A model generated the notes under the pieces. It did no database searches. It was not told the origin of the DNA and worked only from the letters and a program-made list of their open reading frames with translations. Shown piece by piece: positions 19,973 through 60,218 of a DNA stretch of 64,000 nucleotides; positions within the stretch are counted from its first letter, which is position 1, and each line of letters starts with the position of its first letter. The stretch is from Salpingoeca rosetta (taxonomy: Eukaryota; Protista; Choanoflagellata). The stretch lies in assembly GCA_033442325.1 (NCBI GenBank), contig JAWQFM010000004.1:1854926-1918925 (forward strand), given 5' to 3'. The translations under genes and the position numbers were made by a program.

Positions 19973-20324
19973 CATACACACACATACACGTACGTACAAT
20001 TGCCACATAGTTCACGTTCACAACCGACAATCGCCACCACCAGCTCCATTCACCCATATTGCGTGCCATCCAATCCGGGATCCACACACGCACACATACA
20101 CACACATATACTTCCACCTCCACACACACACGCGCCACGTACCAAAGCAGCACACTTCCTTGTTGCTTCGTGTTACCTTGATCCAAGGCAGAACACCTCC
20201 CTCAACTGCTTCAGCTGCGACAGCACAGCAACGCAACAGCAGCTCATCGAGCACAGCAGAAACCAACACACGCACGTGAACGCACACGTGGTGACGAGCC
20301 TTCCCGACACGATCTCAACCTGTG

Positions 20325-37154: not shown

Positions 37155-40100
37155 TCACTGCATCAAGTAGTTGCGGAACTCCTTGAGCAGGGCATCGTCC
37201 ATCGCCTCCGCAGAGTACTCGTCCGGGGCGCAGTCGCACCGCGGCGGGTTCTGCTTCGCATGGTACTCGTCCGTGTGCTGCGTGCGGCGGCGGCGGTACA
37301 CGGGGGACGGCTGCGTCGCCGCCACCGTCTTGAAGCCAGCCTCCCGCACGGGCTTGACAGACTCAGCCGCTGGCTCCTCTCCAAACGACGTCTCCGCCTC
37401 CGCACTCGAGTCGTACAGCGGGTTGGAGAACACGCCGCCCGTCGGCTCGTGCAGCGGGTTGTCCGACGTCACCTGCCCAGAGCCCCACGTGTCGTTGTCG
37501 GTCGCACCGGCTGCCTCATCGCCCAGCAGATCGCCGGAGAAGCCCAGGTCCTGCTGCGGCTGCATCATCAGCGCAGCGCCGCCGTCGTCCTCCTCATCCG
37601 GGTCGGGCTTGTACAGCCAGTGCCGCTCCGCAGTGATGACCTTGGTCGTCGTCTGCGAGAAGCCCAGCTCGCTCATGCGGCCGTCCGAGCGGGCGCCCAT
37701 CAGCGGCGCGTTGACCGTCTTCAGCTCCTCCGTCGTCTTGTAGAAGAAGCGGTTCCCAGTCTCGTTGTCCACCTCGCCGCCAGAGAACGAAAACGTCACC
37801 GGCGCATCTGCACCGCCGTGCACGCGAATCTCGTCGTCCAGGTCCAGGCCCTTGCGGTGCATGATGTCCCGCAGCTCCAGCTCCCGCTCCTTGCTCTGCC
37901 GGCGGTGGCGCACAAGCAGCGCAATGATCAGCAGCACCGCAATCACGGGCACCACCACAGACACCACCAGCGTGCTGTCTGTCGATGACGACCGCGACGG
38001 CGTCGCCCCGTTCGTGTTGTCCTCAAACGTGCCAGACCGCAGCACGGAGAAGCCCAGCACCTGCGTCAGCGCGTCGGACTTGCCAAACCGAGACGCAAGC
38101 GCCTTTGCATCGTATGGGCCATAGAGGTCCGACAGCGGCACCGCAGGCGGCACCACCATCGCCGCCAAGTCGCTGTTGTTCACACCCATGTACTCTGGCA
38201 CAGTCGAAATCACGTGCACGCGCACAACCGTCTCTGTTGCGCGCCGTGCCCGCACCGGAACGCTGCTCACGCCGTCAAAGTTGAGGGTTACGTCGGCGTT
38301 TGTCAGCGTGTCGGTCTCCACAACAAGCACGCCCTCTGGGTCGAGGAAGATGCCCGCGTCCTTCAGGCCGAGGTGGCTCGCCAGCCGCGCCGCCACCAGG
38401 TCCAGGTTGGCCTGAATCTCAGCCAGCGACGCCTGGTCAAAGTCAATCGTCGCAAGCTGCAGCCGGTCGTACACCTCGACGTGCAGGTGGGCGTTGCTGG
38501 AAAGGCCGCCGCCATCCGTGGCCGTCAGCCGCACAACAGACTCCGGGGGGTGTGACCACGGGTTGGTTGCCGTCGTCACCCGGCCCGTCGTATCGTCCAC
38601 GGCGAACAGCGCCGTCGCATTCTGGCTGAACGTCACCTCGGAGAACGTGCCCAGGTCCGGATCCGTCGCGTTGACAAACGGCAGCACCTCCACTGTCACG
38701 TTGAAGGGGAGAAGGCGCGAGTACAGCGACGTGTCCACAAACGCCGGCGCGTTGTCGTTGGTGTCCAGCAGCGCCAGCTCAACCGTGGCAAACCCGACGT
38801 TGTTCCACGCACTCGAGTTGCTCAGCTCCGCCACAGACATGGGCGTCGCCGCCACCGCCGCCGTCAGAGCCTCAAGGTCGGATGCGTAGTTGCTTGTGGC
38901 CACCACAAGCTCAACGCCGTACATGGCCTCCCGGTCAAGGCGAACCGCGCCACTGCTGCCCAGGAACATCAGCTCACCAGATGTCGCGTTCATCGAAAAC
39001 CCGTCCAGCGGCAGCACGCCGCCCACGGCGCCAGACGAGGCAAGCAGGCCACGAGCAGACACAACCGCGTAGTACACGGGGTCCTCGCGCTCCGTGTCCG
39101 GGTCAGTCGCTGACAGCTGGCCCAGCAGCACATCCGTCTCTTGCTCCTCCATGACCTTGATCAGGTACTCGCTGCTGTCAAAGGCGGGCACGCCCAGGTT
39201 GAACTGCAGGTCCACGTACGCCACGCCGCTGGCAATCACGTCACCCGTGCAAGGGTTGGCCCACTGCGCCCGCACCAGCTCGCCCGAGCCGGCCGCAACC
39301 GCCGTCAGCGAGAACGGAGACGCGGGAACAAGCACGCTCTCGTTCGCAGATGACAGCGTCAGGCCCATCTCGCCGGTGATGGCCACGCGGTTGCCGTCGC
39401 CCAGAATGGCCTCCGTCACCACTAGCAGCGCGTCGCCCTCACGCGACACGGCCTCCTCCACCGTCAGCGCCGCCGTCAGGACGTTGCTGATGCCGGCCGA
39501 CGCAGGCGTCACCGTCAGCGACATGCGCGAGAAGGGCAGCACCACAAGCGAGAACACGTCAATCTCCGCGCTGTTCACCGTCAGCGTGAGCGTGTTGGAC
39601 ACAGCGCTGCCTCCAACCGTCGGCAGCGCAAGCGTGGTCGTGCCCGGCTGAAGCGCCCGCAGCTTGGAGCCCTCCAGCGCAATCACGCTCGAATCGCCCA
39701 GCACCAGCGCGTCCGCAAGCAACTCCGTTACGTCCGCACCGAAGGTGTCCTGTGCCGTGCCGCGAGAGAAGCTCGCTTCAACCAGCAGCGTGCTCGGCTC
39801 AAACACGGCCGGGTCGCCCGGGCAGGCGGCGCCGGCAATGGCAAACAGGGTAGTCGTCGTCGCAGAGATGCTGGCGGGCCCCGTCGGGTGCCACACGTCC
39901 AGCAGCGCCTCCGCAGACAGGCTGTCGTATGAGACGTCGACCACCGCACCCTGCTCCCCAGCCGCCGCGTTGGGATCAGCGGAGGCAGAGCAACCCGTCA
40001 GCACCAGCGCAGGGCTGGTTGATGTGCACGACACACTCGTGCTCACATCCACCACCGATGTCACGCTGGGGTTGGACCGCACGGCATATGTCTCAATCGT

Positions 40101-43100
40101 CGCCGCCTGGCTGCTGCCTCCGAGGGCAGCCAGGTTCAGCAGCGACGCGCGGGACGAGCCTGCAAACAGGCCGACGGCGTGGTCGCTCGGCAGCAGGTGG
40201 ATCACACCGGCCTCTTGCACGTGCGGACCGGAGCGGTCGACGCTCGAGCCAACACCGGCGGCGCGCACGCGCGAGCTGTCAATGCCAAGCAGCAGCGACA
40301 CGGAGGCAGACACCTCCGTCGTCGACGCCTGCATGTTGGTGCGGACCAGTGCCGTGATGGTGAACAGCAGCTGCGTCGTCGTGCTTGCCGTGCCATCCGT
40401 TCCAATCACCTGCACCGCTTCCTCACAGGGAGCGCCTCCAGAGATGGTGCGCGAAGCACACACCGGGTTGATGCTCGGCGTGTCGGCGTTGAAGGCCTCG
40501 TTCATATCCACGCTCAAAATGCGCAGCTCGTTCCCGAGCGTCACAGACGCAGTGAACGCGCCAATGCCAGACTCAGACCGCGCATACACGCCAATCTCAA
40601 ACTGCTCGTTCTCGTACAGCCCACGGGCTGGCAGCACAATCCACAAGTCCTCCGCCAGCACGTCCGTGTTGATGTTCACGTTGGACGGCACCAGCAACGC
40701 CGTCGTCTGCGCAGCCACAGCGCCGCCCGTGCCCTTGACACTGCCCGACGCTGTCACCTGCCGTGTCGACGTCGTCAGGAACCACGCTTCCGGCACGGTG
40801 ATGGACAGCATACAGATGCCGTTGAATGGCGCAGCGCTGTTGGCCGTGCACGACGCCGTCTTGCTCAGCGTCAGTGATCCGGACGGCGTGAACCGCACCT
40901 CCACCGTCGCCGGCTGCGTGTGCACCCTGTTCTCGCTATCCAGCACCCGCGCGGCAATGCGCAGCGTACGGTGCCCGCCGTGCTCAAGCACGTCCTGGTA
41001 CACGCGCTCGTCCACAACAAGCAGCTCGAGCTGCGCCGGCGCAGACGCCTCCACAGACACAGACTCCGTGCGCGTGAAGTTGCCCAGGCCAGCAACAACC
41101 TCAAAGCTGTCCCCAATGCTGGTGGAGTACAGCGGGCCCACGCCAAGCGCAAACTGCTGCAGACCGTCATCGGAAGACAGCAGCGTCTGGCCAGCCGCGT
41201 CAAACGGCGCGGCGCCCAGCGTCGAGAACGATGCCCGCTGTGTGTCTGCCAGAAGCACTTGCACCACCGTACGGGACGTCAGGCGCGTCGTGCCTGCGTC
41301 CTGCACAACAATCTCCACCTCAGACTGGCCCGCAGGCAGCGATGTCGCCGGTTGCGCCAGCACAAGCGCGCGCAAGTTCGTGTCGGTCGTCAAGCGCTGC
41401 AGCGTGAACAGGCTGGACACGGGGCCAAACGCAATCGAAAACGTCAGCTGCGCATTCACGCCAATGTCCGCATCCTCTGCGCCAATGTACACCACCGTTG
41501 CGCCAGCATCCGTGCCAGGATCAACGGCGCCTCGGTACGACGAGCGCGTAAACAGCGGGCGGTTGTCGTTGATGTCCTCAACCTCGATGGTCACCGTCAC
41601 GGTGGAGCTGAGCGAGGGAGTGCCAGCGTCTGCAGCCACCACAACAATCTGGTACTCATCCTGTGTCTCGCGGTCCAGCACCCGCTGCGTGCGCAGCTCG
41701 CCCGTTGTCGGGTTCAGCGTAAAGTCGCTCTGCGTTGTCACAATCGCAAGCGTCTGCAGCTGCGCATTCACACCAGCATCCGCATCCGTCACGGTCAGCA
41801 CGCCAACCAGGTCGCTGCCGGTGCCGTTCTCGGCAACAGAGAACGTGATGGAGGCGGCGCCAAACGATGGCGCGTTGTCGTTGATGTCTGTCAGCTGCAC
41901 AGTCACCGCAACAGAGGCGCTCAGGGCCGCACCAGCATCAACAGGCTGATCCGTGACAGTCACGGTGAACGAGTACGAGGCAGATTGCTCGCGATCAAGC
42001 CCGCTTGGCAGCGACAGCTCGCCAGTCACGGCATCAACAGCGAGGCGCGTGTCGTTGCTCGAGTAGCGAAGCACCGCGTTCGGGCCGATGTCTCTGTCCG
42101 TTGCAGCCACAAAACCGAGGGATGCAACAACCGACTCCTCATCCGCGGTGAACACGTAGGATGCACTGTTGAAGACAGGGGCGTTGTCGTTCGCATCGAG
42201 CACGAAGATTGTCACGTTCACAATGCGGTCAAACGTGGAGGAGCTAACGCGCATGGCGAGGTCGTACCGGTCGCGCGTCTCACGATCCAATGGAGCAGCC
42301 AGCTGGAACTGGGCCGTGGTTGGGTCAACGGTGAACAAGGTGTTGCCAGACCCAAACAGGTCGTAGTTGAGCACTGGCACAGACGTTGCACCATCAAACA
42401 CAGCACCGAAACCAACATTCAATGCAAAGTCCTCGGCAACAGAAAGCTCGATGCCCACGTCAAACAGATCACAGAGATCGCTGCGCATGGAGATGTCGAA
42501 GGTGGTGAAGGGGTTGTAGCCGGAGCCGCGGTAGAGGCCGGCACCAAGCGCGCCAACGCTCACATCAAGCAGGCCGCTAAACTTGTACGGCGGCACAGAG
42601 CTGCCGTCAAGGAAAAACTGCCGCGCAACATTCGTCACCCCGTTCACGTCCGTCGTCACAAGCACAAGCGACAGACCAAGGTCCGCAAGCACAAGCTCCG
42701 TGCGCACCCGCACCTCAAACACCCCGTCGCTGCCGTCCACAAGCTCCGCGCGCCAGTACCCGCCCAGGTACGACGCGCGCACACCAGACTCAACCGTAAA
42801 CGGCGCAGCCTCGCCGCGCTCAAACTCAGACGACAAAAACAGCCCCTGCGACGCTACATTCTCGTGCGCAATGTCAAAGTACAGCAGCGTCTGCGCAGCA
42901 TCAGCGGCAACGTCACCCTTCGCCCGCAGCCGCGCCCGGATCGTCAGCGAGCAGTTCGCCTCCGCATCCGTCACATCAAGCACCTCAACGTCGCTCACAA
43001 ACCGCAGCTGCCGGAAGTTCACCTTGGCCAGGTACGACGAGTCGCGCCCGTCAATCACCCCGTTCAGGTCAGCGTCCATCTGCGCCTCCTGCGTCCCGTC

Positions 43101-46100
43101 AGCAAGCAGCGCAGCCTCAAACGCCATACCCTCGGCGTTGCTGAAGCCGGTCGCAGCATACACAATGTACTGGATCGTGAACCGCACATCGCGCACATCG
43201 AAGATGCAGTTGCCATCGGCGTCACCCGTCTCGCGCGCACGTCCAGTCAGCGACAAGCACTGGCTGTCGTCGCACGGCGGGCTGTCGCACGTTGCGCGGC
43301 GCACACGGCGCTCGCCCGCCATCCACGACGTCGCCGACAATCCACTCTCAGCTCCACCCAGCTTCCTGCTGCTGCTACTGCTGCGACGGCGGCGTGCACC
43401 ACCAGACACAAGGAAGTCAAACGTGCCCGCAACAAACGAGCGGCCCTCGCTGCCAATCAGCACGCCATCCAAGTCGGCCATCGTCGTCACGCGCCCGCTC
43501 AGCATCAGCGCCTCTCCGCCACTCACAGTGTTCAGCACGCGGAACCGGATCACAGCAATCGTGTTCAGCCCAGAGATCCCGTTGCCCTCAAGCGCACCGC
43601 CAAACAGCACCTCGCCAGGCGGATCGTCCAGCGTCGGCACAAGCTGCGAGCTCGATGGCCAGTCAGACCCAGCCACCACAGACACAGCCTGCAGCTTGGT
43701 CGCATCATACAGCACCGTCAGGTCAATCGACCCAAGCTGCGTCGTCCCCGTGTTCACGCGCACGTCAACGTCAAACTCAGCCCCAGCGCTCACCGCGCTC
43801 ACCGCGGGCCCGCTCGTCGCGCCAAGGTCGACATCCTCAGCGGCCGGCGCGAGGTTGCAGAAGAACGTCGCCGACCCGCTCACGCCAACATCCGGCTGCG
43901 CAGTGGCAACAATCGTCACCGCCTCCGGGTCGTTCTGCAGCACCGTCACGCGGCCCGTGCTGCTGTCAACGCTCGCCGCGTCCGTGTTGTCCACGCTGAA
44001 GCTCAGCAGGTTCGGCACAGCAACAACACCGCCGCTCACAACGTTCGGGTACTCCGTGCCGTCGTCAAACCGCACGCCCACGCTCACGTCAGATGTCCCA
44101 ACGCCGGCAACCCCGCTCAGCGTGCTCACAAAGTTCACACGCCCGCTCACGCGCGCGCTGTTCAGCACAGCGCTCACAAACACGGGCGTTGTCCCAAGCG
44201 AAAGCCCCAGGTTGCTCGTGCTCGACGCACCCGCAAACGTGGCGCCCACAACCGCGCTGCCCGTCGTCGCAGATCCTGCACGCGACGCAATGCGCCCGCT
44301 CACAGAGATCACGCTGCCGCCAGACAGCACGCTGAACATGGTCAGCCCAGAGGACGACACGTCGCGCGTCGACCCGTCGGTCAGCGTCAGCACAAGGTTG
44401 AGCCGCGCCTGCTGGTACTCGCCCGTGAGCCCAATCGGCCGCAGCTCCGTCACCGCCCGCGACGTCGAGCCCGCGTAGGTCGGGAACGGCGACGCACTCA
44501 CAGTCACATCCTGCACCTGCACAACCGTCACATCCACAGACGCGGTGATGTTGGCGTGTGTAAACGAGACTGAGATAGTGGCCGTTCCGCTCTGTCCAGC
44601 GACAGGCACGACTTGCCGCGACCCGTCCGTGTTCACTTCAAGCGTCACCAAACCTGCAGGCGTGATGTCATACACCGTTCGGGAGTCGTTGGTGCGGTCT
44701 TGTGCGTCCTGGCCATAGATGAGGTCGACCTCAAGCCGAGTGGACGTTGCGACACCAGCGCTTGCGGCGACGCTGCCAGCGTCGGTCAGCGTGGTTGTGC
44801 CCACAGTGATATCTGCGGCGTCTGGAGCAGGAATGGTCACGGTGACAGCGGCAGTGGCCGAGGCAATGACCGTTTCGTTGTTGCACGTTGTTAGCCACCG
44901 CACAGAAACGAGGTCGCCGCTGCCACTGCCAAACGCGACAACGTTGGCGCCTTGCACGCGCACAGAGCCGGTGTTGAGGGACTCCGTCCTGAGCAGAACA
45001 TCTGCATCGTCAAAGCGCAGCGGCATGACTGCAAAGTCAGTGAACTCCGCTGCTGCGTAGATGACACCACTGTCGCCTTCCAGCGCAAACTCCTGCTGCA
45101 GGGAAGCCGTCGCAAGCAAGTTTGCGCCGACACTAATTGTGCCTGGTGCCGACAATTCGAGGGACGTCACCACGTTTGGCATCAGCCGCGAGACGGTGAC
45201 TGGGTCCGACGAAACCGTTACAGGCGTTGAGCCCACAACCTGCGCATCGGGTCGAACAATTTCAAGCAGGGCCTGCCCTGGAGCAGCACCTTCAACCATA
45301 CCATCAGCAACAGTCATCACAGTGGCGTTGCTGGACGAAAACAGGGCCGACACCAGCGAATCCACACGCACTTCCACGTCGCTCTGCGCATCATATGCAA
45401 ATGCAGCTGTGGCAGTGATGAAAGAGCGCTGGTATCGTTGGGCGCAGGCGTTGTTGGGGTCGAGCCAGTCCTGCACAGCGTTCAGCTCCGCATCCTCAAC
45501 CGTCACAGTCACAGGCAACCGCGGTGCCCACACGCGCACAGAAAACACAAAGCTCAGCGCGCCGCCGCCGTACTCAACTGTCACATCAACCTGTGGCGAT
45601 CGCCCGCCCACAGCACTCGTCAAGTCAACAGAGCTGCACCCTGCACCAAGCACAACAGCTTCCGTATCAGACACGCTGCACCCGCTCAGAGAGCCAGTCG
45701 ACAGCGTCCCAACACTGCCAGACCGGTACAGCCCGCGCACAGAGATGCTGCGGCTCACAGTGTCGCCCGTCAGCACAGCCGTGTTCACAAGCTCAGACTC
45801 TGCAACGTGCGCAAACAGCCCCACAACCGCATCCTCAGCAACATAAATGCCGCCAAAGCTTGCCGGCGCCGAGCTCACGCGCGTCAGCCGGTCCTCAAAC
45901 TCCATCGCCCCGTTGCCCGTCGGGAACAGGTCCTCCCCGCGCACGTTCGTCAGCTCCTCCACAACGCCGTCAATGCGCTGCACGGCATCCAGCGTCGCCG
46001 TGCTCAGCACATCAAACTCAATGCGCACGAGGTCCTCTGCGCTCACAGGCTGCGACGACGCCGTCGACGCATCCTGCAGCTGCCCAAACACCGTCCAGTC

Positions 46101-49100
46101 CTGGTCCGTCGTCGCCGTCGTCTGCAGCGAGAACTTGTCCGTGTTCACCGCCGTCACGCTGCGGATCCGCAAGCCAGACCCCGTCGTCACCTGCATCAGG
46201 AACGTGTCTGTCTGGAACCCGGCGTGGCCAGACACTGTGGCCGTCACCCGGTCCCCACGGAACGCCGTCCCAGACGGGATGCTCATGCGCAGCCCCTGCG
46301 ACACGTCGCTAAACTCACGCTGCCGACGCACGCGCACAGTGCCCAGCGACGTGTGCTCGGCTGTCGATTCCCCATTCAAGTACACAAACACCTCCACGCT
46401 CGGGTCCTCGGTCAGCGCAAGCAGCGACGAGTCCGTGAACCACGCCAGCGGCAGGTTGTCTGCCGTCACCGTGCACATACCCGTGCTTGTGCTCGAGCTC
46501 ACCGTGCAGCTTCCCGTCACCTCCGTGTTGCTGATGCCTGCCAGCGTTGCGTCGGGCACAACCCGCACGCGCACCGTGGCCCCGCTCACCCGCACGTTGA
46601 AGGTGCTGTCGCGGACCTGTGCTGCCACTCGGATGCGCCGGCTGCTCGCCCACACCTCCGTGTCCTGCACAGCACCCACGCGCGTCACAGCCGCTTGTCG
46701 AGGGCGCGAGTATGTCACGGAACTGGTCAGCTGCTCACCAAACGCCACTGAGAGATCTCCTTCACGGGTTGTGTCCATCGGTACAAATGCAGTGAGCGAG
46801 TGCTCAAAGACACCACGGATCGGTGATGTGTCCACGATCTCGGTTTCAATTTCTGCGAAGCCCATTCCCGTCACCGCAACGTCTGGCTTAAGACCCATCG
46901 TCGAGACGGTGGAGAGCGTGATGACCGTAAACCCGGTCCTGGGCGGGGTGCCATGGTCGGTGCCCTGCACCAGGATGGAAAAGAGCGATCCCCGGCCCTC
47001 AAGCACCACGGACGTGCGGATGACGCCTGTGTCTGGGTCGATATCAAAGATCTGCGCAACAACCTCATCCACAATCGAAAACGTGACGCGCGCGTTCTCA
47101 CCAGAGTCTGCATCATTGGCCGTGACGTTCGCCACAATGGAGCCAACTGGGAGCAGCGAGGAGATGTGCGGCTCAAAGTCTGCCACAAGAGCAGGCGCGT
47201 TGTCGTTGACATCGAGCACCTGCAACTGCATGGCAAACCTTGCAGACCGAGGCGGCGTTCCGTGGTCCGACGCCACCACGTCAAACGTAATCAACGCTGG
47301 GCCAGCATCATGGTCCAGTGGCTCCGCAACACGAACAACGCCTGTGGTCGCGTTCACGGAGAACTTGTTGGCCACGGACGGATCGCTGAAGTTAGCCAGG
47401 GAGAAGGTGATGCGAGCGTTGTCGCCAATGTCGCCGTCGGTAGCGCTGACGGTTGTCAGCACCGCAACCTGCCGCTCGACAAGAGAGAACTCGTGGTCTG
47501 TGTTCTGAAACACGGGCGTGTGGTCGTTGGCATCCACCACTGCGATGTTCACTGTAAGGTCAGTGGAGAGCGGCGACGCAGAGCGACCAAGCGTCGTGTT
47601 GTATCGTGGCGTGTAGAGGGGGCTACTGTCGCTGGCTCGAAGCGTGATCGTGTACGAATCCACGTCTTCGCGATCCAGAGGCCGCGTTGTGTTGAGAGCA
47701 CCAGTCACGGGGTCAATCGTAAAGATGCTTTCGCTGTTACCCGCGACAATCTCAAAGAGAATGGCCGCGTTGAAATCAACATCGGCGTCTGTGACCGGAA
47801 TGAACGACACCAACGCGCCAGCTGGCAGATTCTCCGTAATGTTCAGCGGCTGGGGCAAATGCTCAAACACAGGGGCGTGCGTGTTCACATCATACACCGT
47901 GACTATCACAGAGGCGAACGAGTGCAGCGGAGACGCAGCCAGGTCCTGCCCGCGCACGGAGATGTTGAGCACAGCCCACTCGCCCTGCAGAGGCACGAAC
48001 GGCTGAGCCAGAACAATTGTGCCGTTCTGCGAAATGTTGAAACGGTTGTCCGGGTTGTTGGCAAGCGTCAGCTCCACAGTCCCGCGAACGCCCGAGTCCG
48101 CATCTGACACGTTCACCACCGCCACAACCGAGCCCACAGCAAGCGTATCAGGAAGCAGTGCCTCATACCCATCGGGGGTAAACTGAGGCGCATTGTCGTT
48201 GTCGTCCATGACGGAAATCATCACAGATGCAGTCGAGGACAGCGGCACAGGTATTCCCAAGTCGGTCGCAGTCACAGTCAGTGCGTACGACATCGTGGTC
48301 TCATAGTCGAGTGGCTGCTGAATGCTGATGGTTCCCAGCATTGCGTCAATGGAAAACCGCCCTTCCTCGTTACCGCCAGTGATGGAGTATCTCACTTCAC
48401 CACCAACGCCGGTGTCCGCATCAGAGGCAATCAGCTGCGTGAGCACCTGTCCAACAGGCGTCAGCTCAGGCACGGAAATCACGACAGTGTCGCGCACGAA
48501 CACAGGTGCATTGTCGTTGGCGTCCGAGATGCTCAGCGTCAGCGTGAAGGTGATTTCCTGCTCGCTCACGCCGTCCACAGGAACAACGTTGCGCGCCGAA
48601 ACGGTGATGAGGTAGTTGTTGACCACTGTGCGATCAAAAGTCATGGCGTTCAGCAGCTCGCCAGAAGTGGTGTTCAACGCAAGGGCATCGGGAGCGGCAA
48701 CAGGCACAGAACCACCCACGGGCGTAGCAAACACAGACAAGAGGCGGAAGGTGACCTCCGAGTACACATCCGTGTCAGCGTCGTCAGTCTCAAACGTGTA
48801 CACAACAGAGCCCATCGGCGCATTCTCAGGAACTTCCGCGCTTGCTGCGCTCACGAAGAACGGCAGGTTGTCGTTCTCGTCTGTGATCGTAATCACCACA
48901 AACGCCGTCGCGTTGAACGTGCCATCCGTGACAGTTGCTGTCAAATTGTATGAAGGCACCGACTCCCGGTCTGTGGGAAGGGAGGACGTTGTCACAACCC
49001 CCGTTGATGGATCAACAGAAAAGTGTTCGGACCCATTGCCAGACAAGGCGTAGGTGAACGAGGTGCTGTCAATGTCATCGACGGACAGCTGAACAATAAA

Positions 49101-52100
49101 AGCACCAGCTGCCGAGTTCTCCGCGACTGATCCGGTGAAGACTGGCATGGCAAAGAAGACTGGGATGTCGTTCACGTTGACGACGACAATGTCGACAACG
49201 GACGTCGCGCTGCGCTGCGTGCTCACGCCCTGATCGCTCGCCTCAACCACGAGCCGGTACGACGTGTTCCGCTCATAGTCAAGCGCGCCCTCAAGCACAA
49301 TCTCGCCGCTCGTGGCGTTGATTGAAAACAGGCCGCTCGAGTTGTCAGACACAAGCCGGTACTCGAGCGTCCCGCTCGCAGCAGCAACCGCAATCCCGCC
49401 GTACTCAGACCCAGGCACATACCCGAGATCCTGGTCCGTCGCGTTCACGTCAACAACAACCATCCCAACCTCCGCCGTCTCAGACACAGGCACCGTCAGT
49501 GACGCAGGCGCAAACACGGGCGAGAAGAAGTTGAAGCACGTGCCCGTTCCGCGCGTGTTGTCAAACTTCATGTTCGGGCTGTACCCGCCCGACAGCGAGA
49601 TGGTCACGTCGTCAAACGCCAGCGACAGCGCGCTCCCGTAGTCGTACGGCGGTAGCGGGCTGCCAAACACAGCCAGCGTGCGCGCAGGCAGCGTGTTCAG
49701 CTCCCCATCAAGCGTCTTCTGGATCGGGCTCAGCCCAATGCCGCTCAGCTCAATCGGCGTGTACAGCGACACCTGGTACAGCCCGCCCCCGATGCTCGCA
49801 GCCTTCACAATGCCGCCAAAGTGCCCGCTGCCCTTGTTCGTCACAACAACCTCGCCCACAGCGGCCGTGCTCGCGTCAAACGCGGCCTGGAACGCGCTTC
49901 CGCCCTGCGCAGACGTCGCAGCAAAGTCAAAGTAAACCTCCGTCTGCCCGTTCGTGTCAGCCGTGTCACCGGCCTTGAGCACCTCCGCAATCACTGTCAG
50001 CTGGCACCCGTCCGTGTCCTCAGCAACAGTCGTCACGCTCACGTTGCGCACAAACCGCAGCTGCCGGAAGTTGATGCGCGCAAGCACAGACGTGTCCGTC
50101 GGGTCGATCACCCCGTTCAGGTCAACGTCCATCGCATCCAGCTGGAAGTCCTGCAGCGCCGCCTTGATGTTCCCACCGCGCACAGTCGAGAACCCGAAGA
50201 TCTCCTCAGTCAGATACACCTGCAGGAACGCAATGTCGTCCAGGTCAAAGATGCAGTCGCCGTTGGTGTCACCGCTCTGTCGCCGCCCGCCGCACTGTGC
50301 CTCCGTGCACGGCGCCGTCGCGCTGCACTTGGTCGTCACTACGTCCGACGCCCGCCGCACGCGCGCGCTCTCGCTCGCATCGTACCCGGCCAGCCCACCG
50401 CTGCTGCTGCGGCGGCGACGCGCCGTGTCCGTTCGCAGATCGCCAGAAATGAACGCGCGCGGCGACGTCCCAGACGCAGCCGGGCTGCCAATGTCGGTCA
50501 CCGATCCGTCGTTGGCCAGCGTCGTGCCCATCTTCTTCGTCACACCGTACAGCTCAATCACGCCCGTCCCGACAACCTGGAACTGGATCGTCGCCAGGTG
50601 GTACGACGTCGACGCAATCCCGTCCTCGGTCACGCCGCCCAGCAGAATCGTCCCGACAGGGTCGTTCAGCGTCTTCACAAACGTGCCACCGGGCCACGTC
50701 GCCCCAGGCACAACGTCCACCGGCTCAACAATCGATGCGTCGTAGTACACCTCAAGGTCAACGCCACCCAGCACCAGCGATCCCGTGTTCACATACACGT
50801 TCACATTGCGTGTGCCGCTGCCCGTCGCAGGCGCAACAGGAACACCAGTCTTGGAGCCAAGGTCAACGTCGCCAATGGCAGGCGCAAGGTTGCACGCAAA
50901 CGCCGTGCTCCCGCTCACCCCGCCCGCATCCACCGCCGTCGCCGTCACGGTCACCGTCTCGTGGTGGTTCGCAAGCAGCGTCACCTCGCCAGTCGTGCTG
51001 TCCACAGACGCCACCGCGGTGTTGTCCAGGCTGAACGTCACCAGGTTGTCAAACTGCCGGTTGCCCGAGCTGTCAAACACAGACTCGTACCGCGTCCCGT
51101 CGTCAAACTCAACCCCGAGGCGCACAAACGCGCTGCTCGTGCCGCTCTGGCCGCTCAGCGTGCCAACAAACGACACCCGTCCAGTCTGCCGGTTCTCGTT
51201 CAGGATGGCGCTCACAAGCACAGGCGTCGACGTCAGCGTCACCGTCACCGTGTTGTCTGCCTCAAGCCCGGCGTGCACAGCAGAGATGACAACGCTGCCG
51301 CTCGTGCTCGCGCCGTCCCGCGCAACACGCCGCCCGCTCAGCGCCAGCCCCACGCCGCCCACAATGCTGTAGCTCGTCGATCCAGATGGGCTCACGTCGC
51401 GCGTCACGCCGTCTGTGCCCACGAGCTTCAGCTCCAGCTCAGCCTCCTGGTACTCGCCCGTTCCGGAGAGCGCGTTCAGCTCGTCAGCAATGTCGCTCGC
51501 CGACCCAGCATACGAGGGATACGGCCGCGGCACAAGCGTCGCCGTCGACACACCCACAACCTGCACGCTCACCGTCGCCGTCACGCCAACGTGCGTGAAC
51601 GACACGCCGAGCACGCCCGTGCCCGTCAGCCCAGCCGTGTTCGCAACCACAAGCGGCACAGGGCCACTGCGGTCAATCGTGAACAAGCCGTTGCTCTGGC
51701 TCAGGTCATACACCGTGCGGTTGTCGTTGCTGCGGTCAAGCCGCGTGCTGCCGTATACGAGCTCCACAGTCACCGCCGTCGACGTCGGGAACACGTTCGT
51801 GTCCGCAAACGGGCTCGGCAGCCCAGGCGCGCTCGGGTACGTCACCTTCGCGTTCGCCACAGTCATGCTCACAGAGTCGGGGTCCACCAGCGACACGTTC
51901 ACAAAAGCCGTGCCCTGCGCAAGCACCCCAAATCCGCAGCCCGTCGACGGCTCCCACTGCAGCCGCACCAGGTCGCCCGCGCCGTTGCCAAACGCAGCAA
52001 CCTTGTTGGTGTCCGTCACAACAACCGTCGACCGCGCCTTGCTCGTCAGCGAGAGCCCCATCGCCGGCGTCACCTCAAGGCTCGCGCCATCAGAGAACGT

Positions 52101-55100
52101 CACAGCCGCAAACACGTCCGCTTCCTCCTCTTCAACATCAAGCTCCTGCAGCAGCGTCAGCCGCGCCGTCTGCTCGCTGTCCGTCGAAAACGATGTGCTG
52201 GACAGCGTCAGCTCCGCGCTCGTCAGCGCAAGCCCGCGCACGTAGCTCGCGTTCACAAACCCGCCGCCAACAGCCACTTCCACAAAGCCAGCAAGCCGCC
52301 CGCCCGCGTTCAGCGTCACGTTGGCAACGCCGGCTCCCACGCCGCGCACCATCAGCCCGTCCACGCTCGCAACGCCGCCGTCGCTCACGCTCAGGTGCCC
52401 GTCCACAACGTCGTTCACCACAACCTGCTTCGCAGGCCCGCTCGGCGAGTACCGATATGTCGCAACAGCCTTCACCCGCCCGCGCTGGTACTCCTGCGCA
52501 CACGTGCCGCTCGTCATCCAGCCGTACACAGGCGACAGCTGTGCGTCGTTCAGGCCCAGCGAAATCGGAAGCTCCGGCGCCCACACGCGCGCCCGCACAA
52601 CCGCCTGCTCCCCGCTGCTGACGTGCTGCACAGTCACAGCCACAAGCCCGCTGCCCTGCGTCGTCGTCGCTGCGCGAAGCTCCAGCCGGTTGCAGCTGCT
52701 CCCCACAGCAACCACAGACGTGTCGTCGCTGCTGCAGCTCAGCCCGCTCGAAAGCGTCGACAGCGCGCCCTGCCGGTTCAGCTGCTTCGTCGTCAGCGTC
52801 ACCGTCTGCGTCGACCCGTCCAGCACAGCCGTGTTCACAAGCTCTGCCTGCGCCAGGTAGCTGAACACAGCCGTCACAGGGTTCGAGGCAACATACACCG
52901 TGCCCGTGCCCTCGTGCTCACCAAGCCGGTCAACCACGCGCCCAGGCACAGGGCTCAGCACAATCGGCTCGTTCAGGTTGCGCAGGAACTTGATCTGCAC
53001 CGTCAGGCTGTGCGTCGTGTCCAGCGCCGCGCTCGATCGCGCGCGCATCGCAACACGAACCAGCTCCTGCGCGGCAACCTCAACTGTCGGCAGCCCGGCC
53101 TCGTTGTCGTGGTTCGCAGACAACCCAGCGGACAGCCCGCCGTCCGTCACAAGCGGCGCCGCCCGCCACGTCCCAGAGTCAAAGTTGATGCTCAGAATCT
53201 CAAGGTCGCTGCTCACGTCAAACTGCAGCGTAAACGCCGTCACAGGCAGCGTCGCGTCACCATACACAACGGCCTCAAACGTCTCCCCAACAAACACAGG
53301 CCGCAGCGGCATCTGCACCTGCACATCGTTGTTCGTCGGGCTGCTGCTCGCAGTGATGCCAAACGTCGGCTGGTACCGCAGCGTCACATCCCCGGCAGAC
53401 GTCAGCCCCGTCCGCTCATCGCTGAACCCGTACTGCACCTGCACAACCTGGTCCCCAGACACAACTGTGTCAGAGAACCACGACGCCGGCACCGTCACAG
53501 ACGCCGTGCACATCCCCGTCGCCGTGCCCACCTTGCACGACCCGACCAGGTTCGACGCGCCAGCCGCAGACGCAAGCTCGCTCGTCGGAACAACGACAAT
53601 CTTCACATACGTGTTCAACTCAACACGGCTGCTCCACAGCTCGTCCCACACCTGCAGCACCGCCTTCACAGTCCGGTCGCCGTCCGCGTACAGCTCGGTG
53701 AACGCCAGCGTCGCCGACACCTGCGTTGCACTGCGCCGCTGCGTCGAGTACGACACGCTGTTCGACGTCAGCGCGCTCCCCAGGTACGCACGTACACTGC
53801 CGCTGCTCCCAACAGCAGCGTTGTTGAACAGGGTGAGCTTCTCATCAAACTCGAGCGTTCCGACGAGAGCTGTGGAGCCCATGGGATAGCCGACCGCAGT
53901 TGTTGAGAACGAAATTGGCATGGGATCTGTGACGAAGATTGTGAGCATGACGGAGCTTGACTTGGCATTGAGCAAGCTTCCTTCGTCCTGCACCCACACG
54001 GCAAGCTCATACAGGGTTTGGGTTTCCCGCGAGAGCTGGCCGTTCACCCGCAGCTCGCCCGTGGTTTCGTCCAGGCTGAAGGCGCCATCTGGCGTTGTCG
54101 ATGCGCCGCCCTGGAAGTAGAAGCGGAAGCCCTGGTTGCAGCTGTCTTGATCTGTTGCATTGAACCGCACCACCACTGTGCCAACGACAGAGTCCTCGGG
54201 AACAAACTGAAAGTAGCTGTCCTGCGAGAACTGTGGGGTGTAGACGTTATCGTCCAGGATGGTCACGAGCACCGACGCATCTGCGCTTCGGCGGTAGCCG
54301 TTGAAGTACCTGCACCCCTGACGACAGATGCTGCTTGTGCACAAGGTCTCGCACTGGGCGAGCGTCGATGAGGTGTTGCCGTGCACGCAGCCTTGCTTGC
54401 ACCCGTCAAACGACTCGCCCGTGCTGAGAAACAGCAGGTGGCAGCGGTCGCTGCACTCGCTGACGGTGCCGTTCGGGTTATCCGTGACACGCACCCCAAA
54501 CGTGACTGTGTCAACGTTGTCGGTACAGAACTGCCCGTTTGTTGTGACAACGCCAGTGTCTGGGTCGATGTTGAAGCGGTCCGAGTCTGGGCCGTCGAGG
54601 ACGGAGAAGGTGAGGCGTGCGTTCTCGCCGGCATCCAGGTCAAACGCGCTGCCCACAAGCACGTTGTCTGTGACTGGGTCGCGGGTTTCCGTGAACCCAA
54701 ACCCGTATGCGGTCGACTTTGTAAACTGGGGGGTTTCGTCGTTCATGTCGCCAACCTGCACGAGGACGCGGGTGGTGGAGGAGAGCTGGGGGTGGCCGCT
54801 GTCCGAAGCACGCACGTACACGTTGTACTGGGGAACGGTGAGGGTCTCGCGGTCCAGCACATCTGCAGTGAGGAGAAGGCCCTGTGTTGGTTCGATCAGG
54901 AAAGGGCTGCTTCCAACAATGGAGTAGGTGACGGTGTGCTGGGCCGGGTTGCCACGATCCTGGTCCGTTGCGTTGACTTGAACAAAGGCAATGTTGAGCA
55001 GGTCGTTCTCGTACACCTGTGCGGTGTAGAGGTCCTTCTCAAACACCGGCGGGAACTCGTTCACGCCAAACACAGTCACAATGACGTGGGCCACAGAGGA

Positions 55101-58100
55101 CAGTGGCGGAGAGCCGTTGTCCTCCGCGACAAGCGTGACGTTGAAGGACGAGTACTGTTCACGGTCAATTGTGCGCTGGAGCTCAAAGCGCAGGTCCGTG
55201 GTGAGCTTGAACTTGCGGGGGCTCACGTCGCCACCTGCAATGACAACGCTCACGTCGGAGTTGTTGCCGCTGTCGGCATCGGTCACCTCAATCTGGGCAA
55301 GCAGCGAGTTTGCTGTCTTGTTCTCAAAGATGTCCACGTAGTACGTGTCCTGGGAGAAAATGGGGCGGTTGTCGTTGATGTCGTTGATGTTGATGGTGGT
55401 CGTGGCCATCTGCATCCTGGACGGCGTGCCGTGGTCCCGTGCAACAATGACCAGCGTGAGCTCATGGAGCTGCTCGTAGTCAAACCCGGTGGCGTTGGCG
55501 ATGTACAGCTCGCCCGTCGCGTTGTTGATGTCCAACAGAACGTGTCCGCCTGGCCCGCTGTTGCCACTCTGAATGCTGTAGGTGACGAGCGAGTTTGGCG
55601 TGTTTGGCTCATCAGCGTCTGTGGTATTGTACGTGGCAACGACGGTGCCCTCCGGCGTGTGCTCATCGACGCTGAGCTCAGCGAAGGGGGCCACAAAGGT
55701 GGGTGTGTTGTCGTTGACGTCGACCAAGTTCACGGTGACTTGCGTGAAGTTGGAGAGGCCGCCGCCGTCGGTCACGTTGACGTCCAGCGTGAACGAGCGG
55801 ACAACCTCAAAGTCAAGGGCTGTTTGGTCCATGGTGGTGAGGATGCCCGTGGTTGCGTCGAGATGGAACGGGGTGCCCAGGTCAGACGTGAGCGGATCGA
55901 TCAGGGTGAAGGTGAGGCGGCCAAAGCTGCCAGAGTCTGCGTCCGTGGCGTTGATCTGGGCGATGATGGTGCCACCCAGCGTGTTTTCGCGAATGGTGCG
56001 CGTGACGGGCGGGTGCAGCAGCTGTGGGTAGTTGTCGTTTTCATCCAGCACAATGACGTCGACGCGGGCTGTGGAGTTCATGGGTGGCACACCGTGATCG
56101 ATTGCCATGACGGTGATGTTGTAGCTGGTGGTGCGCTCATAATCCAGCGGCAGACTGCTAACAAGGGACATGCCTTCAATGACAAAGCCGCCAGCCTCGT
56201 TGCCACCAACAATGCTCAGTGTGTAGTTTCCGTTGTCACCGGAGTCTGCGTCGGAGACGTTGAAGGTGACAATCGACGTGTGCGGCGCCATGTACTCAGA
56301 CACGCGACGAATGTGCAGTGGCTGCGCAAACAACGGCGCGTTGTCATTTTCGTCTGTGATCCACACGTACACGGGATGGGTGATGTTGAAGCCGCCGTCA
56401 GACACCTGCACGGTGTACGTGTACTCCTGAACGAGCTCGTAGTCGATACTGGTGGCGAGAGTGATGACACCTGTGCTCGGGTTGATGGAGAAGGGCATGC
56501 TCGATTCCAGGATGGAGTATGTCAGCGTTGCGAACATTGGGTGAATGTCGGGGTCCGTGGCTGAAATGTTGAGGATGGTGGAGGAAACCGGAGTGGCCTC
56601 CGAAATGGTGGCATTGAACAGGACGAAGGGATCAAAGGCCGGCGTCTCGTTGATGTCCGTGATGTTGACGAGCACGGTGGTGGTGACGTTGAAGGCGCCA
56701 GGGTTGACACCGTTGTCAGACACAACAACCTCAAGCGTGTACGATGTCACGCTCTCATAGTCAAGCTCAGCCTTCATCACAACAACGTGGCCAGTCCCGT
56801 TGATGGAAAACAAGCCGTTCACATTCGTCGCAGGTGTGATCGTGTACGTCAGCACGTTGCTCGGCGCTGTCACATCTGCATCGCTCGCAAACACGCGGGC
56901 CGCAACATGACCGGCACCAGCAGACTCAAGCACCTCATACACATCAACGTTGTTGATCACAGGCGTCTCGTCGTTCAGATCCTGGATGTGCACCGTAACA
57001 ACAAGGTCTGCGCCCTCAGACGACAGGCTGGGGCTTCCGCCGTCGGTCGCCCGAATCACAATCGTCTCCGTCGCGCTGTACTGCTCAGCATCCAGTGCCA
57101 CCAGCGACACCAGGTTGCCGTTGCCGTCGAGCCCAAACGCGCTCGGGGCGGTGGTGTTGTGGATGCTCAGTGACACCACGGCGTTGTCGCCGCTGTCTGC
57201 GTCAGACACGTTCACCGGCACGCTGAAGCTGCCGCCATCAAGCACCGTCGTCTCGTACGCCGTCTCCGCAAACACAGGCGGGTTGTCATTGATATCTGTG
57301 ATTGTGACTGTGACGACGGCACTGTCCTGCTCGAAAAAGTCGCGAAGCGGGAAGACGATGACGCTGACCTCGTAGTAGTGTGTGCCTGGATAGGGGAAGT
57401 TTGTGGCCTCGTAGTCCAGCGGGGCGTTGATGGAGAACACGCCCGTGATGGCGTTAACGGCAAAGGCCTTTTCGCTTGCCGGGCCCGGGTTACCACCGGT
57501 GATGGAGAAGATGTTGTCGACAGAACCCTGCTCAATGTCAGCGTCGGTGATGGTGAAGGTGACGATGGCAGTGCCGACGGTGGCGTTCTCCGGGACGGTC
57601 ATGGCCCAGCGCGGCTGCGTGAAGAAGGGCGGCAAGTCGTCGACGTTTGTGATGTTCACGTAGACGGCCACCTCGCTGCTGCGCGGGATGTCTGGGTGGT
57701 TGTCGGTGGCGTTGACGACAAACACGTGCACGGTGGTGGTTTCGGCGTCAAAGGACTGCCGGGTGGTGATGGCGCCCGTGGCAGCGTTGATGGCAAAGGG
57801 GACGCTGAGGGGATCACGGATGCGGTAGGTGACCAGGGCCCCCTCGTCCATGTCGATGGCCAGGACAGTGCCGACGGCCGTCCCGGAAGCGGCGTTCTCC
57901 TCCACCTGGAAGATGTACGGCGAAGCGGTGAAGGTGGGCGCGTCCTTGTTGGGGACGCCCTTCAGGACGGAGATGGTGAGGTTGGCCGTGCCCATGAGCG
58001 GCGGCGTGCCTTCGTCGTACGCAAGCAGCTCCACGTGATGCTGCGGCACAAGGGTGCTGTTGAGGGTGCCGTTGAGGACAACAAGGCCCGTGTCGTCGAT

Positions 58101-59656: not shown

Positions 59657-59689
<33 letters not shown>

Positions 59690-59695
59690 TGTGTG

Positions 59696-59756
<61 letters not shown>

Positions 59757-60218
59757 GTGTTGTGCTGAATTGGCAGCTGGAGGTGAACGGCGCACTGGAC
59801 CACTTTCGAGATGCACATGCAGCCGGAACAACAGCCGAACCAAACAGGCTGAAGAACCAGCTCACCAGTGATCCACACGTCCTCCCCCCCCCCCACCAAC
59901 ACGTCCCCCACACTTGCAAAACGTACCTTGTGCCGTTGTTGAGAGAAAGGCAAGTGTGAAGAAGATGGTCAGGGTGAGGAGTGTCCTCGCCGCGTTGCGC
60001 TGGAACCAGGAAGGCGGCTGCGCCCGGGGACGACGACGACAACGCCGATGATGACTGTCATGGTGTTGTCGTTGTCGGTGTGTGCACGGTTTTTCCACTG
60101 CCGGCACTGCTGGTGCTGGTGCCGGTGCCGGTGCCAGAGTTGCTGTTCTGTGCTGCGCGTGCACGCAGGAACCAGCGCCGAAGAAGCTGTGGTCATCTGT
60201 GTGTTGGTGCCAAGGCAT
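37155..60218 (-). CDS. Giant cadherin (~7,550 aa), coherin/TMEM132-like: ~31 EC repeats, 3 TMEM132-like modules, 2 cohesin-dockerin cassettes, TM, cytoplasmic tail
   Basis: Exon 1 60218-59927 ends in a signal-like stretch TLLTLTIFFTLAFLSTTAQG. A phase-1 GT-AG intron (59926-59525) joins it to a 22.37-kb exon 59524-37155. Repeated DxNDNxPxF, LDRE/LDYE and AxDxD cadherin motifs; TM at ~37911-37970. The start codon choice is less certain than the rest. Confidence 0.93.

What the first reader, a model, noticed from the sequence alone, without database searches (positions are those of the whole stretch)
43014..43790. Second copy of the cassette keeps both cleavage sites despite a diverged spacer
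Seen: cohesin 2 (AGAEFDVDVRVNTGTTQLGSIDLTVLYDATKLQAVSV...IAVIRFRV), RRRR (43383-43394), a largely unrelated 24-aa spacer, RRVRR (43296-43310), a three-Cys segment, and dockerin 2 (GDADGNCIFDVRD...DADLNGVIDGRD, 43014-43226). The spacer differs in length and sequence while ARRRRSSS and RVRRA are retained. Inference: selection acts on the cleavage sites themselves, which independently supports the processing model.
Basis: partly seen in the sequence, partly recalled or inferred. Interest (0 to 1): 0.8.

Follow-up and report, generated by a model that had tools for sequence, protein, structure and literature searches.

The report
Convertase-cut cohesin-dockerin joint, second copy
A giant adhesion protein of the choanoflagellate Salpingoeca rosetta has a bacterial-type cohesin and dockerin pair separated by a floppy linker with two furin-type cutting motifs; these motifs are strongly conserved in about 200 related copies, including one from a sponge, which suggests the protein is cut and then held together by a calcium-dependent clasp.

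Summary
Window 43014-43790 (minus strand) encodes cohesin 2, RRRR, a 24-aa spacer, RRVRR, a Cys-rich segment and dockerin 2. All lie inside a 7,562-aa ORF, the S. rosetta 'FAT3 protein', a coherin-type cadherin with three TMEM132-like modules.

The basic motifs carry 1.6-3.4 bits per position. The spacer carries 0.2-0.5 bits and varies from 4 to 77 aa. Site 2 reads R-x-[R/K]-R with P3 free. Outside the cassettes the motif occurs about 240 times less often per residue. 141 cassettes keep both sites, 36 keep one and 32 keep none.

Both folds hold up: the cohesin by Pfam and TM about 0.8, the dockerin by a profile match to solved dockerins (E 2.4e-9) and TM 0.75-0.84. AlphaFold models the cassette as one rigid body (pTM 0.86) with a disordered linker. 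RNA-seq covers the cassette without splicing.

Cleavage, the protease and the clasp are inferred, not shown. The most likely mechanism is proprotein-convertase cleavage followed by non-covalent, Ca2+-dependent cohesin-dockerin holding.

This scan noted the same joint on other pieces of this genome; those notes are not independent evidence.

The parts
37155..59843 (-). Giant ORF (7,562 aa). It corresponds to NCBI 'FAT3 protein' of Salpingoeca rosetta (P0001, 7,553 aa, with a different 5' exon). It is a coherin-type cadherin with about 30 cadherin repeats, three TMEM132-like modules, two cohesin-dockerin cassettes, one TM helix and a cytoplasmic tail.
43404..43835 (-). Cohesin 2. The Pfam match covers 43473-43805; the last beta strand of the model ends at 43404.
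   Evidence: Pfam PF00963, E 5.6e-13, 49.7 bits against a cut-off of 24.1. AF2 pLDDT 95-98. Foldseek matches type I cohesins with TMt 0.77-0.81.
43383..43394 (-). Basic site 1 (RRRR, ORF aa 5484-5487), followed by Ser at P1'.
43311..43382 (-). Spacer of 24 aa (SSSSSRKLGGAESGLSATSWMAGE). It is not conserved and is predicted to be disordered.
   Evidence: Spacer columns carry 0.16-0.5 bits. Length ranges from 4 to 77 aa across the family. pLDDT is 51-59.
43296..43310 (-). Basic site 2 (RRVRR, ORF aa 5512-5516), an R-x-R-R motif followed by Ala at P1'.
43257..43295 (-). Cys-rich N-terminal extension of the dockerin (ATCDSPPCDDSQC). Together with the Cys in the first Ca2+ loop it probably forms a closed set of two disulfides.
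   Evidence: The Cys count of this region is even (0, 2 or 4) in 195 of 209 cassettes. pLDDT is above 90.
42999..43226 (-). Dockerin 2. It has two 12-residue Ca2+-binding loops (DADGNCIFDVRD and DADLNGVIDGRD), each followed by a helix.
   Evidence: The family profile matches solved type I dockerins at E 2.4e-9. AF2 pLDDT is 94.8. The 25 best Foldseek matches are all dockerin chains, with TMt up to 0.84 among them.
50052..50804 (-). Cassette 1, the paralogous copy: cohesin 1 (50469-50804), RRRR (50409-50420), a 15-aa spacer, RVRR (50352-50363), a Cys-rich segment and dockerin 1 (50052-50273).
38241..38252 (-). A third RARR|A motif about 90 aa outside the TM helix (TM at 37911-37979). It may be a juxtamembrane convertase site; I did not test its conservation.

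Best explanation
Cassette 2 is the second 'cut-and-clasp' joint of a giant coherin-type cadherin. In the secretory pathway a kexin/furin-type proprotein convertase cuts after RRRR (aa 5487) and after RRVRR (aa 5516). This removes the disordered 24-aa spacer plus the site 2 residues (29 aa in all). The membrane-anchored C-terminal piece then starts at ATCDSPP, three residues before the disulfide-stapled dockerin. The upstream piece ends just after cohesin 2. The two pieces stay together because the flanking cohesin and dockerin bind each other without a covalent link, in a Ca2+-dependent way. With cassette 1 cut in the same manner, the single chain becomes a three-subunit chain whose joints could open under force or at low Ca2+, or swap partners.

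Shown: the domains, the motifs, their strong and position-specific conservation, the disordered linker, and expression of the unspliced sequence.

Inferred: the cleavage itself, the protease, and cis-holding by the cohesin-dockerin pair.
For: 1. Motif conservation across 209 cassettes from 139 proteins. Site 2 reads R(2.64 bits)-x(0.21)-R/K(2.52)-R(3.35). Site 1 carries 1.6-2.5 bits and the spacer 0.16-0.5 bits.
2. The sequence context fits convertase sites. At site 2, P4 is Arg in 118 of 150, P3 is free, and P6 is enriched in His/Arg. P1' is Ser/Ala/Gln/Asn/Asp/Glu, and P2' at site 1 is mostly aliphatic. Weaker variants keep a bare KR.
3. The positions are fixed at the domain edges. P1 of site 1 lies 13 aa (11-15) after the last cohesin strand motif. 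P1 of site 2 lies 3 aa (2-5) before the first Cys. The spacer varies from 4 to 77 aa.
4. The motif is about 240 times more frequent per residue in the linker than elsewhere in the same proteins (82 in 437,500 aa outside). In the roughly 6,100-aa relatives almost every R-x-[K/R]-R lies in a cassette linker.
5. The AF2 model has pLDDT 91 and pTM 0.86, although about 35 linker residues score only 51-59. That pTM is close to the ceiling for a single rigid body and far above the roughly 0.5 expected for two independent domains.
6. Cohesin and dockerin membership hold up, and both Ca2+ loops are intact (read directly from the sequence).
7. There is no cysteine within 275 aa N-terminal of the cut in 45 of 177 site-bearing cassettes, and the cohesin has no Cys in 172 of 209. 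A local disulfide therefore cannot be the general way of holding the pieces.
8. Both sites are kept in the sponge Sycon ciliatum, in other Salpingoeca species and in S. rosetta paralogues.
9. Kexin-like convertases exist in choanoflagellates (two genes in Monosiga, bioRxiv 10.1101/802215; PCSK family, PMC2770060). Carboxypeptidase D is reported in S. rosetta (PMC6850559).
10. Strand-specific RNA-seq covers 41500-45500 without any joint, so the spacer and both sites are translated.
Against: - No protein-level data exist here: no neo-N-termini, no fragment sizes.
- I could not read the model coordinates, so contact at the canonical cohesin-dockerin face is not verified. A high pTM could also come from another packing mode.
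- 32 cassettes, mostly from a subfamily of roughly 7,900-aa proteins, have no basic site and a shorter linker. Cleavage is therefore not needed for the cassette to exist.
- 36 cassettes keep only one site, so excision of the spacer is not essential.
- I did not check for a convertase in S. rosetta itself by sequence.
- An ESM Atlas shape search matched only the cohesin part, so the two-domain arrangement has no independent confirmation.
Confidence: 0.6

Rival explanations
1. The sites are cut, but the freed cohesin and dockerin mainly bind in trans. They would bind other copies of the protein or other cassette-bearing receptors, building head-to-tail polymers or cell-to-cell and cell-to-matrix links, much like a cellulosome.
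For: S. rosetta has several genes with the cassette (P0001 twice, P0098, P0106, P0142), so there are many potential partners. The middle fragment would carry a dockerin at one end and a cohesin at the other. Bacterial cohesin-dockerin pairs work in trans (established knowledge).
Against: AF2 places the adjacent cohesin and dockerin as one rigid body (pTM 0.86). Adjacent partners at very high local concentration should bind first. Cassettes without any cut site still keep both domains, which argues for an intramolecular contact.
Confidence: 0.15
2. The basic motifs are conserved for a reason other than proteolysis, for example binding sulfated glycans or acidic surfaces, or contacting the acidic dockerin. 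On this reading the chain stays intact.
For: No cleavage data exist. Arg clusters can bind polyanions. Cassettes without the motifs exist.
Against: The pattern is not a plain charge cluster. P3 is unconstrained (0.21 bits) between strongly constrained P4, P2 and P1. Lys is tolerated mainly at P2. The minimal variants are KR dibasic pairs. P1' is never basic and rarely bulky. There are two sites at fixed domain borders around a spacer of free length and sequence. The segment is modelled as disordered rather than packed on the dockerin.
Confidence: 0.15
3. The sites are cut, but the pieces are held covalently by a disulfide across the cut, as in integrin alpha chains or the insulin receptor. The cohesin-dockerin contact would then be secondary.
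For: A lone Cys about 12 aa before the cohesin (FxCNLxP) is present in 103 of 209 cassettes, including both S. rosetta copies. It has no local partner, and it co-occurs with basic sites in 99 of those 103.
Against: The Cys counts on the C-terminal side are closed sets: 0, 2 or 4 in the dockerin extension in 195 of 209, and usually 2 in the next domain. That leaves no free partner. 78 site-bearing cassettes lack the upstream Cys, and 45 have no Cys within 275 aa.
Confidence: 0.1

Closest known systems
Coherin cadherins of choanoflagellates and sponges, and the TMEM132 architecture (Nichols et al. 2012, as cited in PMC6030884; Sanchez-Pulido & Ponting 2017, PMC6030884)
   Same: This is a cadherin-repeat receptor with Pfam cohesin domains and the full ordered set of TMEM132 domains, repeated three times. 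It occurs in choanoflagellates and in a sponge.
   Different: The held literature describes the cohesin but not an adjacent dockerin or cleavage motifs. PMC6030884 states only that dockerin homologues are not detectable in vertebrates. The point here is the cohesin - two basic sites - dockerin unit and its conservation.
Bacterial cellulosomal type I cohesin-dockerin pairs (e.g. PDB 1OHZ, 4FL4, 4UYP)
   Same: The same two folds. The dockerin has two Ca2+ loops and matches solved dockerins by profile at E 2.4e-9. The cohesin aligns with TM about 0.8.
   Different: Here both partners sit next to each other in one eukaryotic chain. The dockerin has a disulfide-stapled N-terminal extension. The linker carries eukaryotic convertase motifs, and the host protein is an adhesion receptor rather than an enzyme scaffold.
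Furin-processed non-covalent heterodimeric receptors (Notch S1 cleavage, PMC2770060; FAT1 cadherin and others from general knowledge)
   Same: An R-x-K/R-R site in the ectodomain of a large adhesion or signalling receptor. The pieces are proposed to stay associated without a covalent link.
   Different: The holding module is a cohesin-dockerin pair, not a Notch HD domain. There are usually two cuts that remove a spacer, and several joints per chain.
Self-cleaving SEA and GAIN domains of mucins and adhesion GPCRs (general knowledge)
   Same: A cleaved but still associated ectodomain joint that can act as a mechanical break point.
   Different: SEA and GAIN domains cleave themselves within a single fold. 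Here an external protease would cut a disordered linker between two separate binding domains.

Membership tests
Cohesin (Pfam PF00963) | Profile match above the curated cut-off | tested here: met
   Cassette 2 scores 49.7 bits (E 5.6e-13) and cassette 1 scores 26.6 bits, against a cut-off of 24.1.
Cohesin (Pfam PF00963) | Nine-stranded beta-sandwich fold like solved cohesins | tested here: met
   AF2 pLDDT is 95-98. Foldseek E is 7e-9 to 1e-5 against about 50 cohesin chains, with TMt up to 0.81.
Dockerin type I (Pfam PF00404) | Pfam profile match above the curated cut-off | tested here: not met
   Cassette 1 scores 16 bits against a cut-off of 22.9 (E 0.014). Cassette 2 has no hit. Some relatives carry precomputed PF00404 hits.
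Dockerin type I (Pfam PF00404) | Homology to solved dockerins by family profile, over both repeats | tested here: met
   A profile of 90 segments (A3) matches 4FL4_A at E 2.4e-9 over positions 15-85, plus more than 20 further dockerin chains.
Dockerin type I (Pfam PF00404) | Duplicated Ca2+-binding loop and helix (EF-hand-like, Asp/Asn at loop positions 1, 3, 5, 9, 12) | tested here: met
   The loops DADGNCIFDVRD and DADLNGVIDGRD are intact. The loop 1 positions are Asp/Asn in about 85-100% of the 209 cassettes. The fold has TMt 0.75-0.84 to dockerins.
Dockerin type I (Pfam PF00404) | Binds a cohesin | not testable with these tools
   Support is indirect only: pTM 0.86 for the two-domain model.
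Proprotein-convertase (kexin/furin) substrate | R-x-K/R-R or dibasic motif | tested here: met
   RRRR|S and RVRR|A are present. The family logo has P4 Arg, free P3, P2 Arg/Lys and P1 Arg.
Proprotein-convertase (kexin/furin) substrate | Site exposed, in the lumenal/extracellular part of a secretory protein | tested here: met
   The linker pLDDT is 51-59 between two well-folded domains. The site lies N-terminal of the single TM helix, among cadherin repeats.
Proprotein-convertase (kexin/furin) substrate | A convertase is present in the organism | not tested
   Literature only: two kexin-like genes in Monosiga brevicollis (10.1101/802215); PCSK family in the choanoflagellate (PMC2770060). S. rosetta was not checked by sequence here.
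Proprotein-convertase (kexin/furin) substrate | Actually cleaved | not testable with these tools
   This needs proteomics or blots.
Coherin cadherins | Cadherin repeats and a cohesin domain in one transmembrane protein of choanoflagellates or sponges | tested here: met
   Cadherin E 1e-265 with 21+9 stretches, Cohesin, and one TM helix. The organism is S. rosetta. The definition is taken from PMC6030884 citing Nichols 2012; the original paper is not held.
FAT cadherins (the NCBI name 'FAT3 protein') | Orthology to metazoan FAT, with its membrane-proximal EGF and laminin G domains | tested here: not met
   No EGF or laminin G family appears among the Pfam hits at E <= 0.01. Only cadherin-type and TMEM132-type families and Cohesin were found. 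The name reflects similarity of the cadherin repeats.

The most novel reading that the evidence does not exclude
Choanoflagellates and at least one sponge use a bacterial-type cohesin-dockerin pair as a convertase-matured, Ca2+-dependent snap joint. Giant cadherins would then be made as one chain, cut at two or three joints, and exist as non-covalent multi-subunit chains. The joints could act as mechanical fuses or exchange partners between molecules and cells. This would be a cellulosome-like assembly principle at the root of animal adhesion.
Probability: 0.4. Interest if true: 0.85.

Novelty: new variant of a known kind. Interest (0 to 1): 0.72.

Why it matters
Cadherins of choanoflagellates are studied as precursors of animal cell adhesion, yet their mode of action is unknown.

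A conserved joint that is cut and then held by one of the strongest known non-covalent protein pairs would give these receptors defined break or exchange points. It would also be a eukaryotic, non-cellulosomal role for cohesin-dockerin binding.

It could also explain why cohesin-like domains persist in the animal TMEM132 family, which is linked to deafness and panic disorder, although no dockerin partner is known there.

The idea is directly testable. The predicted fragments and neo-N-termini are specific, and S. rosetta is genetically tractable.

Tried and rejected
- **Recent gene conversion as the cause of motif identity:** rejected. The DNA differs at 4/24 and 4/15 positions while the peptides are identical.
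- **Spacer as an intron or assembly artefact:** rejected. Strand-specific RNA-seq is continuous with no joints, and the NCBI model includes it.
- **Spacer as a conserved released peptide:** rejected. It has no conservation and varies from 4 to 77 aa; the only compositional feature is a His excess.
- **Disulfide bridge across the cut as the general holder:** unlikely, from Cys parity and Cys-free N-terminal sides.
- **Foldseek of the whole cassette:** showed only cohesin hits, so the dockerin was folded and searched alone.
- **ESM Atlas shape search:** gave only cohesin-part matches and did not confirm the two-domain arrangement.
- **The look-up of encoding contigs on the giant relatives:** Shorter relatives came from unnamed metagenome assemblies, so the taxonomy of most relatives is unknown.
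- **Papers not held:** Nichols 2012 and Peer 2009 could not be read. I therefore cannot exclude that the dockerin next to the cohesin was noted there.
- **The 4504 RVRR motif:** it is not shared with module 1 and looks lineage-specific.


Full report
**What is there**

The finding lies on the minus strand inside a single 22.7-kb ORF (37155..59843, 7,562 aa). A word-indexed protein search identified it at 100% identity as the 7,553-aa 'FAT3 protein' of Salpingoeca rosetta.

Pfam shows about 30 cadherin repeats and the ordered TMEM132 domain set (second Ig, cohesin-like, fourth, fifth and sixth Ig), plus a bona fide Cohesin domain. Self-comparison shows a large internal duplication: aa 4346-6100 match aa 1999-3784 at 34% identity over 1,850 aa. 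A third partial TMEM132-like module lies at 6263-6895. One TM helix (aa about 7289-7311) is followed by a cytoplasmic tail.

This is the coherin/TMEM132-type architecture described by Sanchez-Pulido and Ponting (PMC6030884).

**Check of the observation**

- cohesin 2: 43404-43835
- RRRR: 43383-43394
- 24-aa spacer: 43311-43382
- RRVRR: 43296-43310
- ATCDSPPCDDSQC: 43257-43295
- dockerin 2: 42999-43226

The paralogous cassette 1 lies at about 50052-50804. The two modules are 41% identical over about 600 aa. ARRRRSSS and RVRRA are identical, while the spacer is 15 vs 24 aa long and mostly different. The DNA under the motifs differs at 4/24 and 4/15 positions while encoding identical peptides, so the identity is kept at protein level. 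The ORF has eight R-x-[K/R]-R motifs against 0.66 expected from composition.

**Are the domains real?**

Cohesin 2 passes Pfam (49.7 bits against a cut-off of 24.1). In an AlphaFold2 model built on a 120-cassette alignment it superposes on solved type I cohesins with TMt up to 0.81.

The dockerin fails Pfam's threshold: 16 bits for copy 1 and nothing for copy 2. However, a profile of 90 homologous segments matches solved bacterial type I dockerins over both repeats (4FL4_A, E 2.4e-9, plus more than 20 further dockerin chains). The isolated segment folds with pLDDT 94.8. Its 25 best Foldseek matches are all dockerin chains (TMt up to 0.84, rmsd about 2.5 Å for the best).

Both 12-residue Ca2+ loops are intact (DADGNCIFDVRD and DADLNGVIDGRD). 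The loop 1 positions are Asp/Asn in about 85-100% of relatives.

A profile of 14 cassettes, searched against 1.84 billion representative proteins, found 233 proteins at E < 1e-30. In the 150 best, together with S. rosetta and the first hits, a local hmmsearch found 209 full cassettes in 139 proteins.

Relative entropy per column:

| Region | Bits per position |
|---|---|
| Site 1 | 1.57, 2.49, 2.19 |
| Spacer | 0.16-0.5 |
| Site 2, P4 / P3 / P2 / P1 | 2.64 / 0.21 / 2.52 / 3.35 |
| The three Cys | 4.7-4.9 |

Site logos:
- At site 2, P4 is Arg in 118 of 150 and P3 is free.
- P6 is enriched in His/Arg.
- P1' is Ala/Gln/Asn/Ser at site 2 and Ser/Ala/Asp/Glu at site 1.
- P2' at site 1 is mostly aliphatic.
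- Weak variants keep a bare KR.

The sites are pinned to the domain edges. P1 of site 1 lies 13 aa (11-15) after the FVAG strand motif. P1 of site 2 lies 3 aa (2-5) before the first Cys. The spacer runs from 4 to 77 aa, median 18.

Outside the cassettes the strict motif occurs 82 times in 437,500 aa. In the linker windows it is about 240-fold more frequent. In the roughly 6,100-aa relatives nearly every such motif lies in a cassette linker.

141 cassettes have a basic site at both positions, 36 at one (mostly site 1) and 32 at neither. The last group comes mostly from a subfamily of roughly 7,900-aa proteins with shorter linkers.

Named relatives:
- Salpingoeca urceolata and S. macrocollata
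- the calcareous sponge Sycon ciliatum, whose cassette keeps both sites (GSRRRRS...HRHRRSMAC)
- three further S. rosetta genes (EGD75074, PTSG_11806, PTSG_03507)

. Most other relatives come from unnamed metagenome assemblies.

**Structure and accessibility**

The cassette model has mean pLDDT 91 and pTM 0.86. Residues 151-180, which hold the spacer and part of both sites, score only 51-59.

About 35 of the 311 residues are disordered, so 0.86 is near the ceiling for one rigid body. Two freely jointed domains would give about 0.5. AlphaFold therefore predicts a confident cohesin-dockerin packing in cis. This is my inference from the score. The coordinates and PAE were not available, so the interface was not inspected. 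An ESM Atlas shape search matched only the cohesin part.

**Covalent or non-covalent?**

- The Cys count of the dockerin's N-terminal extension plus first loop is even (0, 2 or 4) in 195 of 209 cassettes.
- The domain after the dockerin usually has two Cys.
- The cohesin has none in 172 of 209.
- A lone Cys about 12 aa before the cohesin (FxCNLxP) is present in 103 cassettes, including both S. rosetta copies. It has no local partner.
- 45 of 177 site-bearing cassettes have no Cys at all within 275 aa N-terminal of the cut.

A disulfide across the cut is therefore not the general solution.

**Expression**

Three strand-specific RNA-seq runs cover 41500-45500 continuously on the strand expected for a minus-strand gene. 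There are no joints and no indels. Ten of the twelve differences from the reference are synonymous, including the one next to RRRR.

**Enzyme**

I did not check S. rosetta for a convertase by sequence. The literature reports two kexin-like genes in Monosiga brevicollis (bioRxiv 10.1101/802215), PCSK-family proteins in the choanoflagellate (PMC2770060) and carboxypeptidase D in S. rosetta (PMC6850559).

**Interpretation**

Selection on the two basic motifs is shown. Their shape, position and exposure are those of kexin/furin sites, so cleavage is the best reading (about 0.7). That the pieces are then held by the flanking cohesin-dockerin pair is the best-supported continuation (about 0.6 overall for the full mechanism).

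Rival readings:
- trans pairing after cleavage (0.15)
- a non-proteolytic role of the Arg motifs (0.15)
- a covalent bridge across the cut (0.1)

**Novelty**

Cohesins in choanoflagellate and sponge cadherins, and the TMEM132 relationship, are published (PMC6030884). In the searchable library no paper links dockerin with choanoflagellates beyond that one, and none links dockerin with furin in a relevant way. Nichols 2012 and Peer 2009 were not readable.

I rate this a new variant of a known kind: convertase-processed, non-covalently held adhesion receptors, here with a cohesin-dockerin clasp.

This scan has already noted the same joint on other pieces of this genome, with follow-up reports reaching a similar reading. 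Those are not independent evidence.

Noticed in passing
window 42502-44544 and its borders: In a DNA-like run (X1) contig depth doubles (about 26 to 47.5) exactly over this 2,043-bp piece, which holds cassette 2. Alternative flanks branch off at both borders. The same loose ends appear in RNA run X21 (13 and 11 reads). One bubble replaces 44545-45426 with 879 other letters. The alternative flank 30-mers are not in the window. This points to a second, expressed allele or paralogue that shares this piece.
   Followed up: partly
window 38241-38252 (ORF aa 7198-7201): A third RARR|A motif lies about 90 aa outside the TM helix, downstream of the third TMEM132-like module, which lacks a cohesin-dockerin cassette. 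It may be a juxtamembrane convertase site. In relatives the last cassette instead sits about 350 aa before the TM.
   Followed up: partly
window about 43850-43870 and about 50860-50880 (FFCNLAP / FACNLAP): A lone conserved Cys about 12 aa before each cohesin has no local partner. It is present in about half of all cassettes. In the relatives inspected it is absent from the membrane-proximal cassette of the roughly 6,100-aa proteins. It could be a free thiol or form a long-range or intermolecular disulfide.
   Followed up: partly
window 59532-59843: The first roughly 100 codons of the mechanical ORF run through a (TG)n microsatellite (59633-59764, read as THTHTH...). The NCBI protein starts differently (MPWHQH...). 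The true 5' exon(s) therefore lie elsewhere, and coding in this exon starts downstream of about 59530. The 22-kb exon itself is free of the TG/CA microsatellites that fill the rest of the window.
   Followed up: no
P0002 3855-4150 and 5590-5885: In a 7,819-aa relative with four cassettes, two cassettes are identical in sequence. This indicates a very recent internal duplication and that such modules keep being copied.
   Followed up: no
window 18001-20000: GC drops to 0.38 against 0.53-0.66 elsewhere in the window. I did not examine it.
   Followed up: no
spacers of 150 cassettes (family-wide): His is 4.2-fold enriched in the spacers, mostly at P6/P5 of site 2 (e.g. HRHRR, HTRLRR). This may hint at pH-dependent cleavage.
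   Followed up: partly
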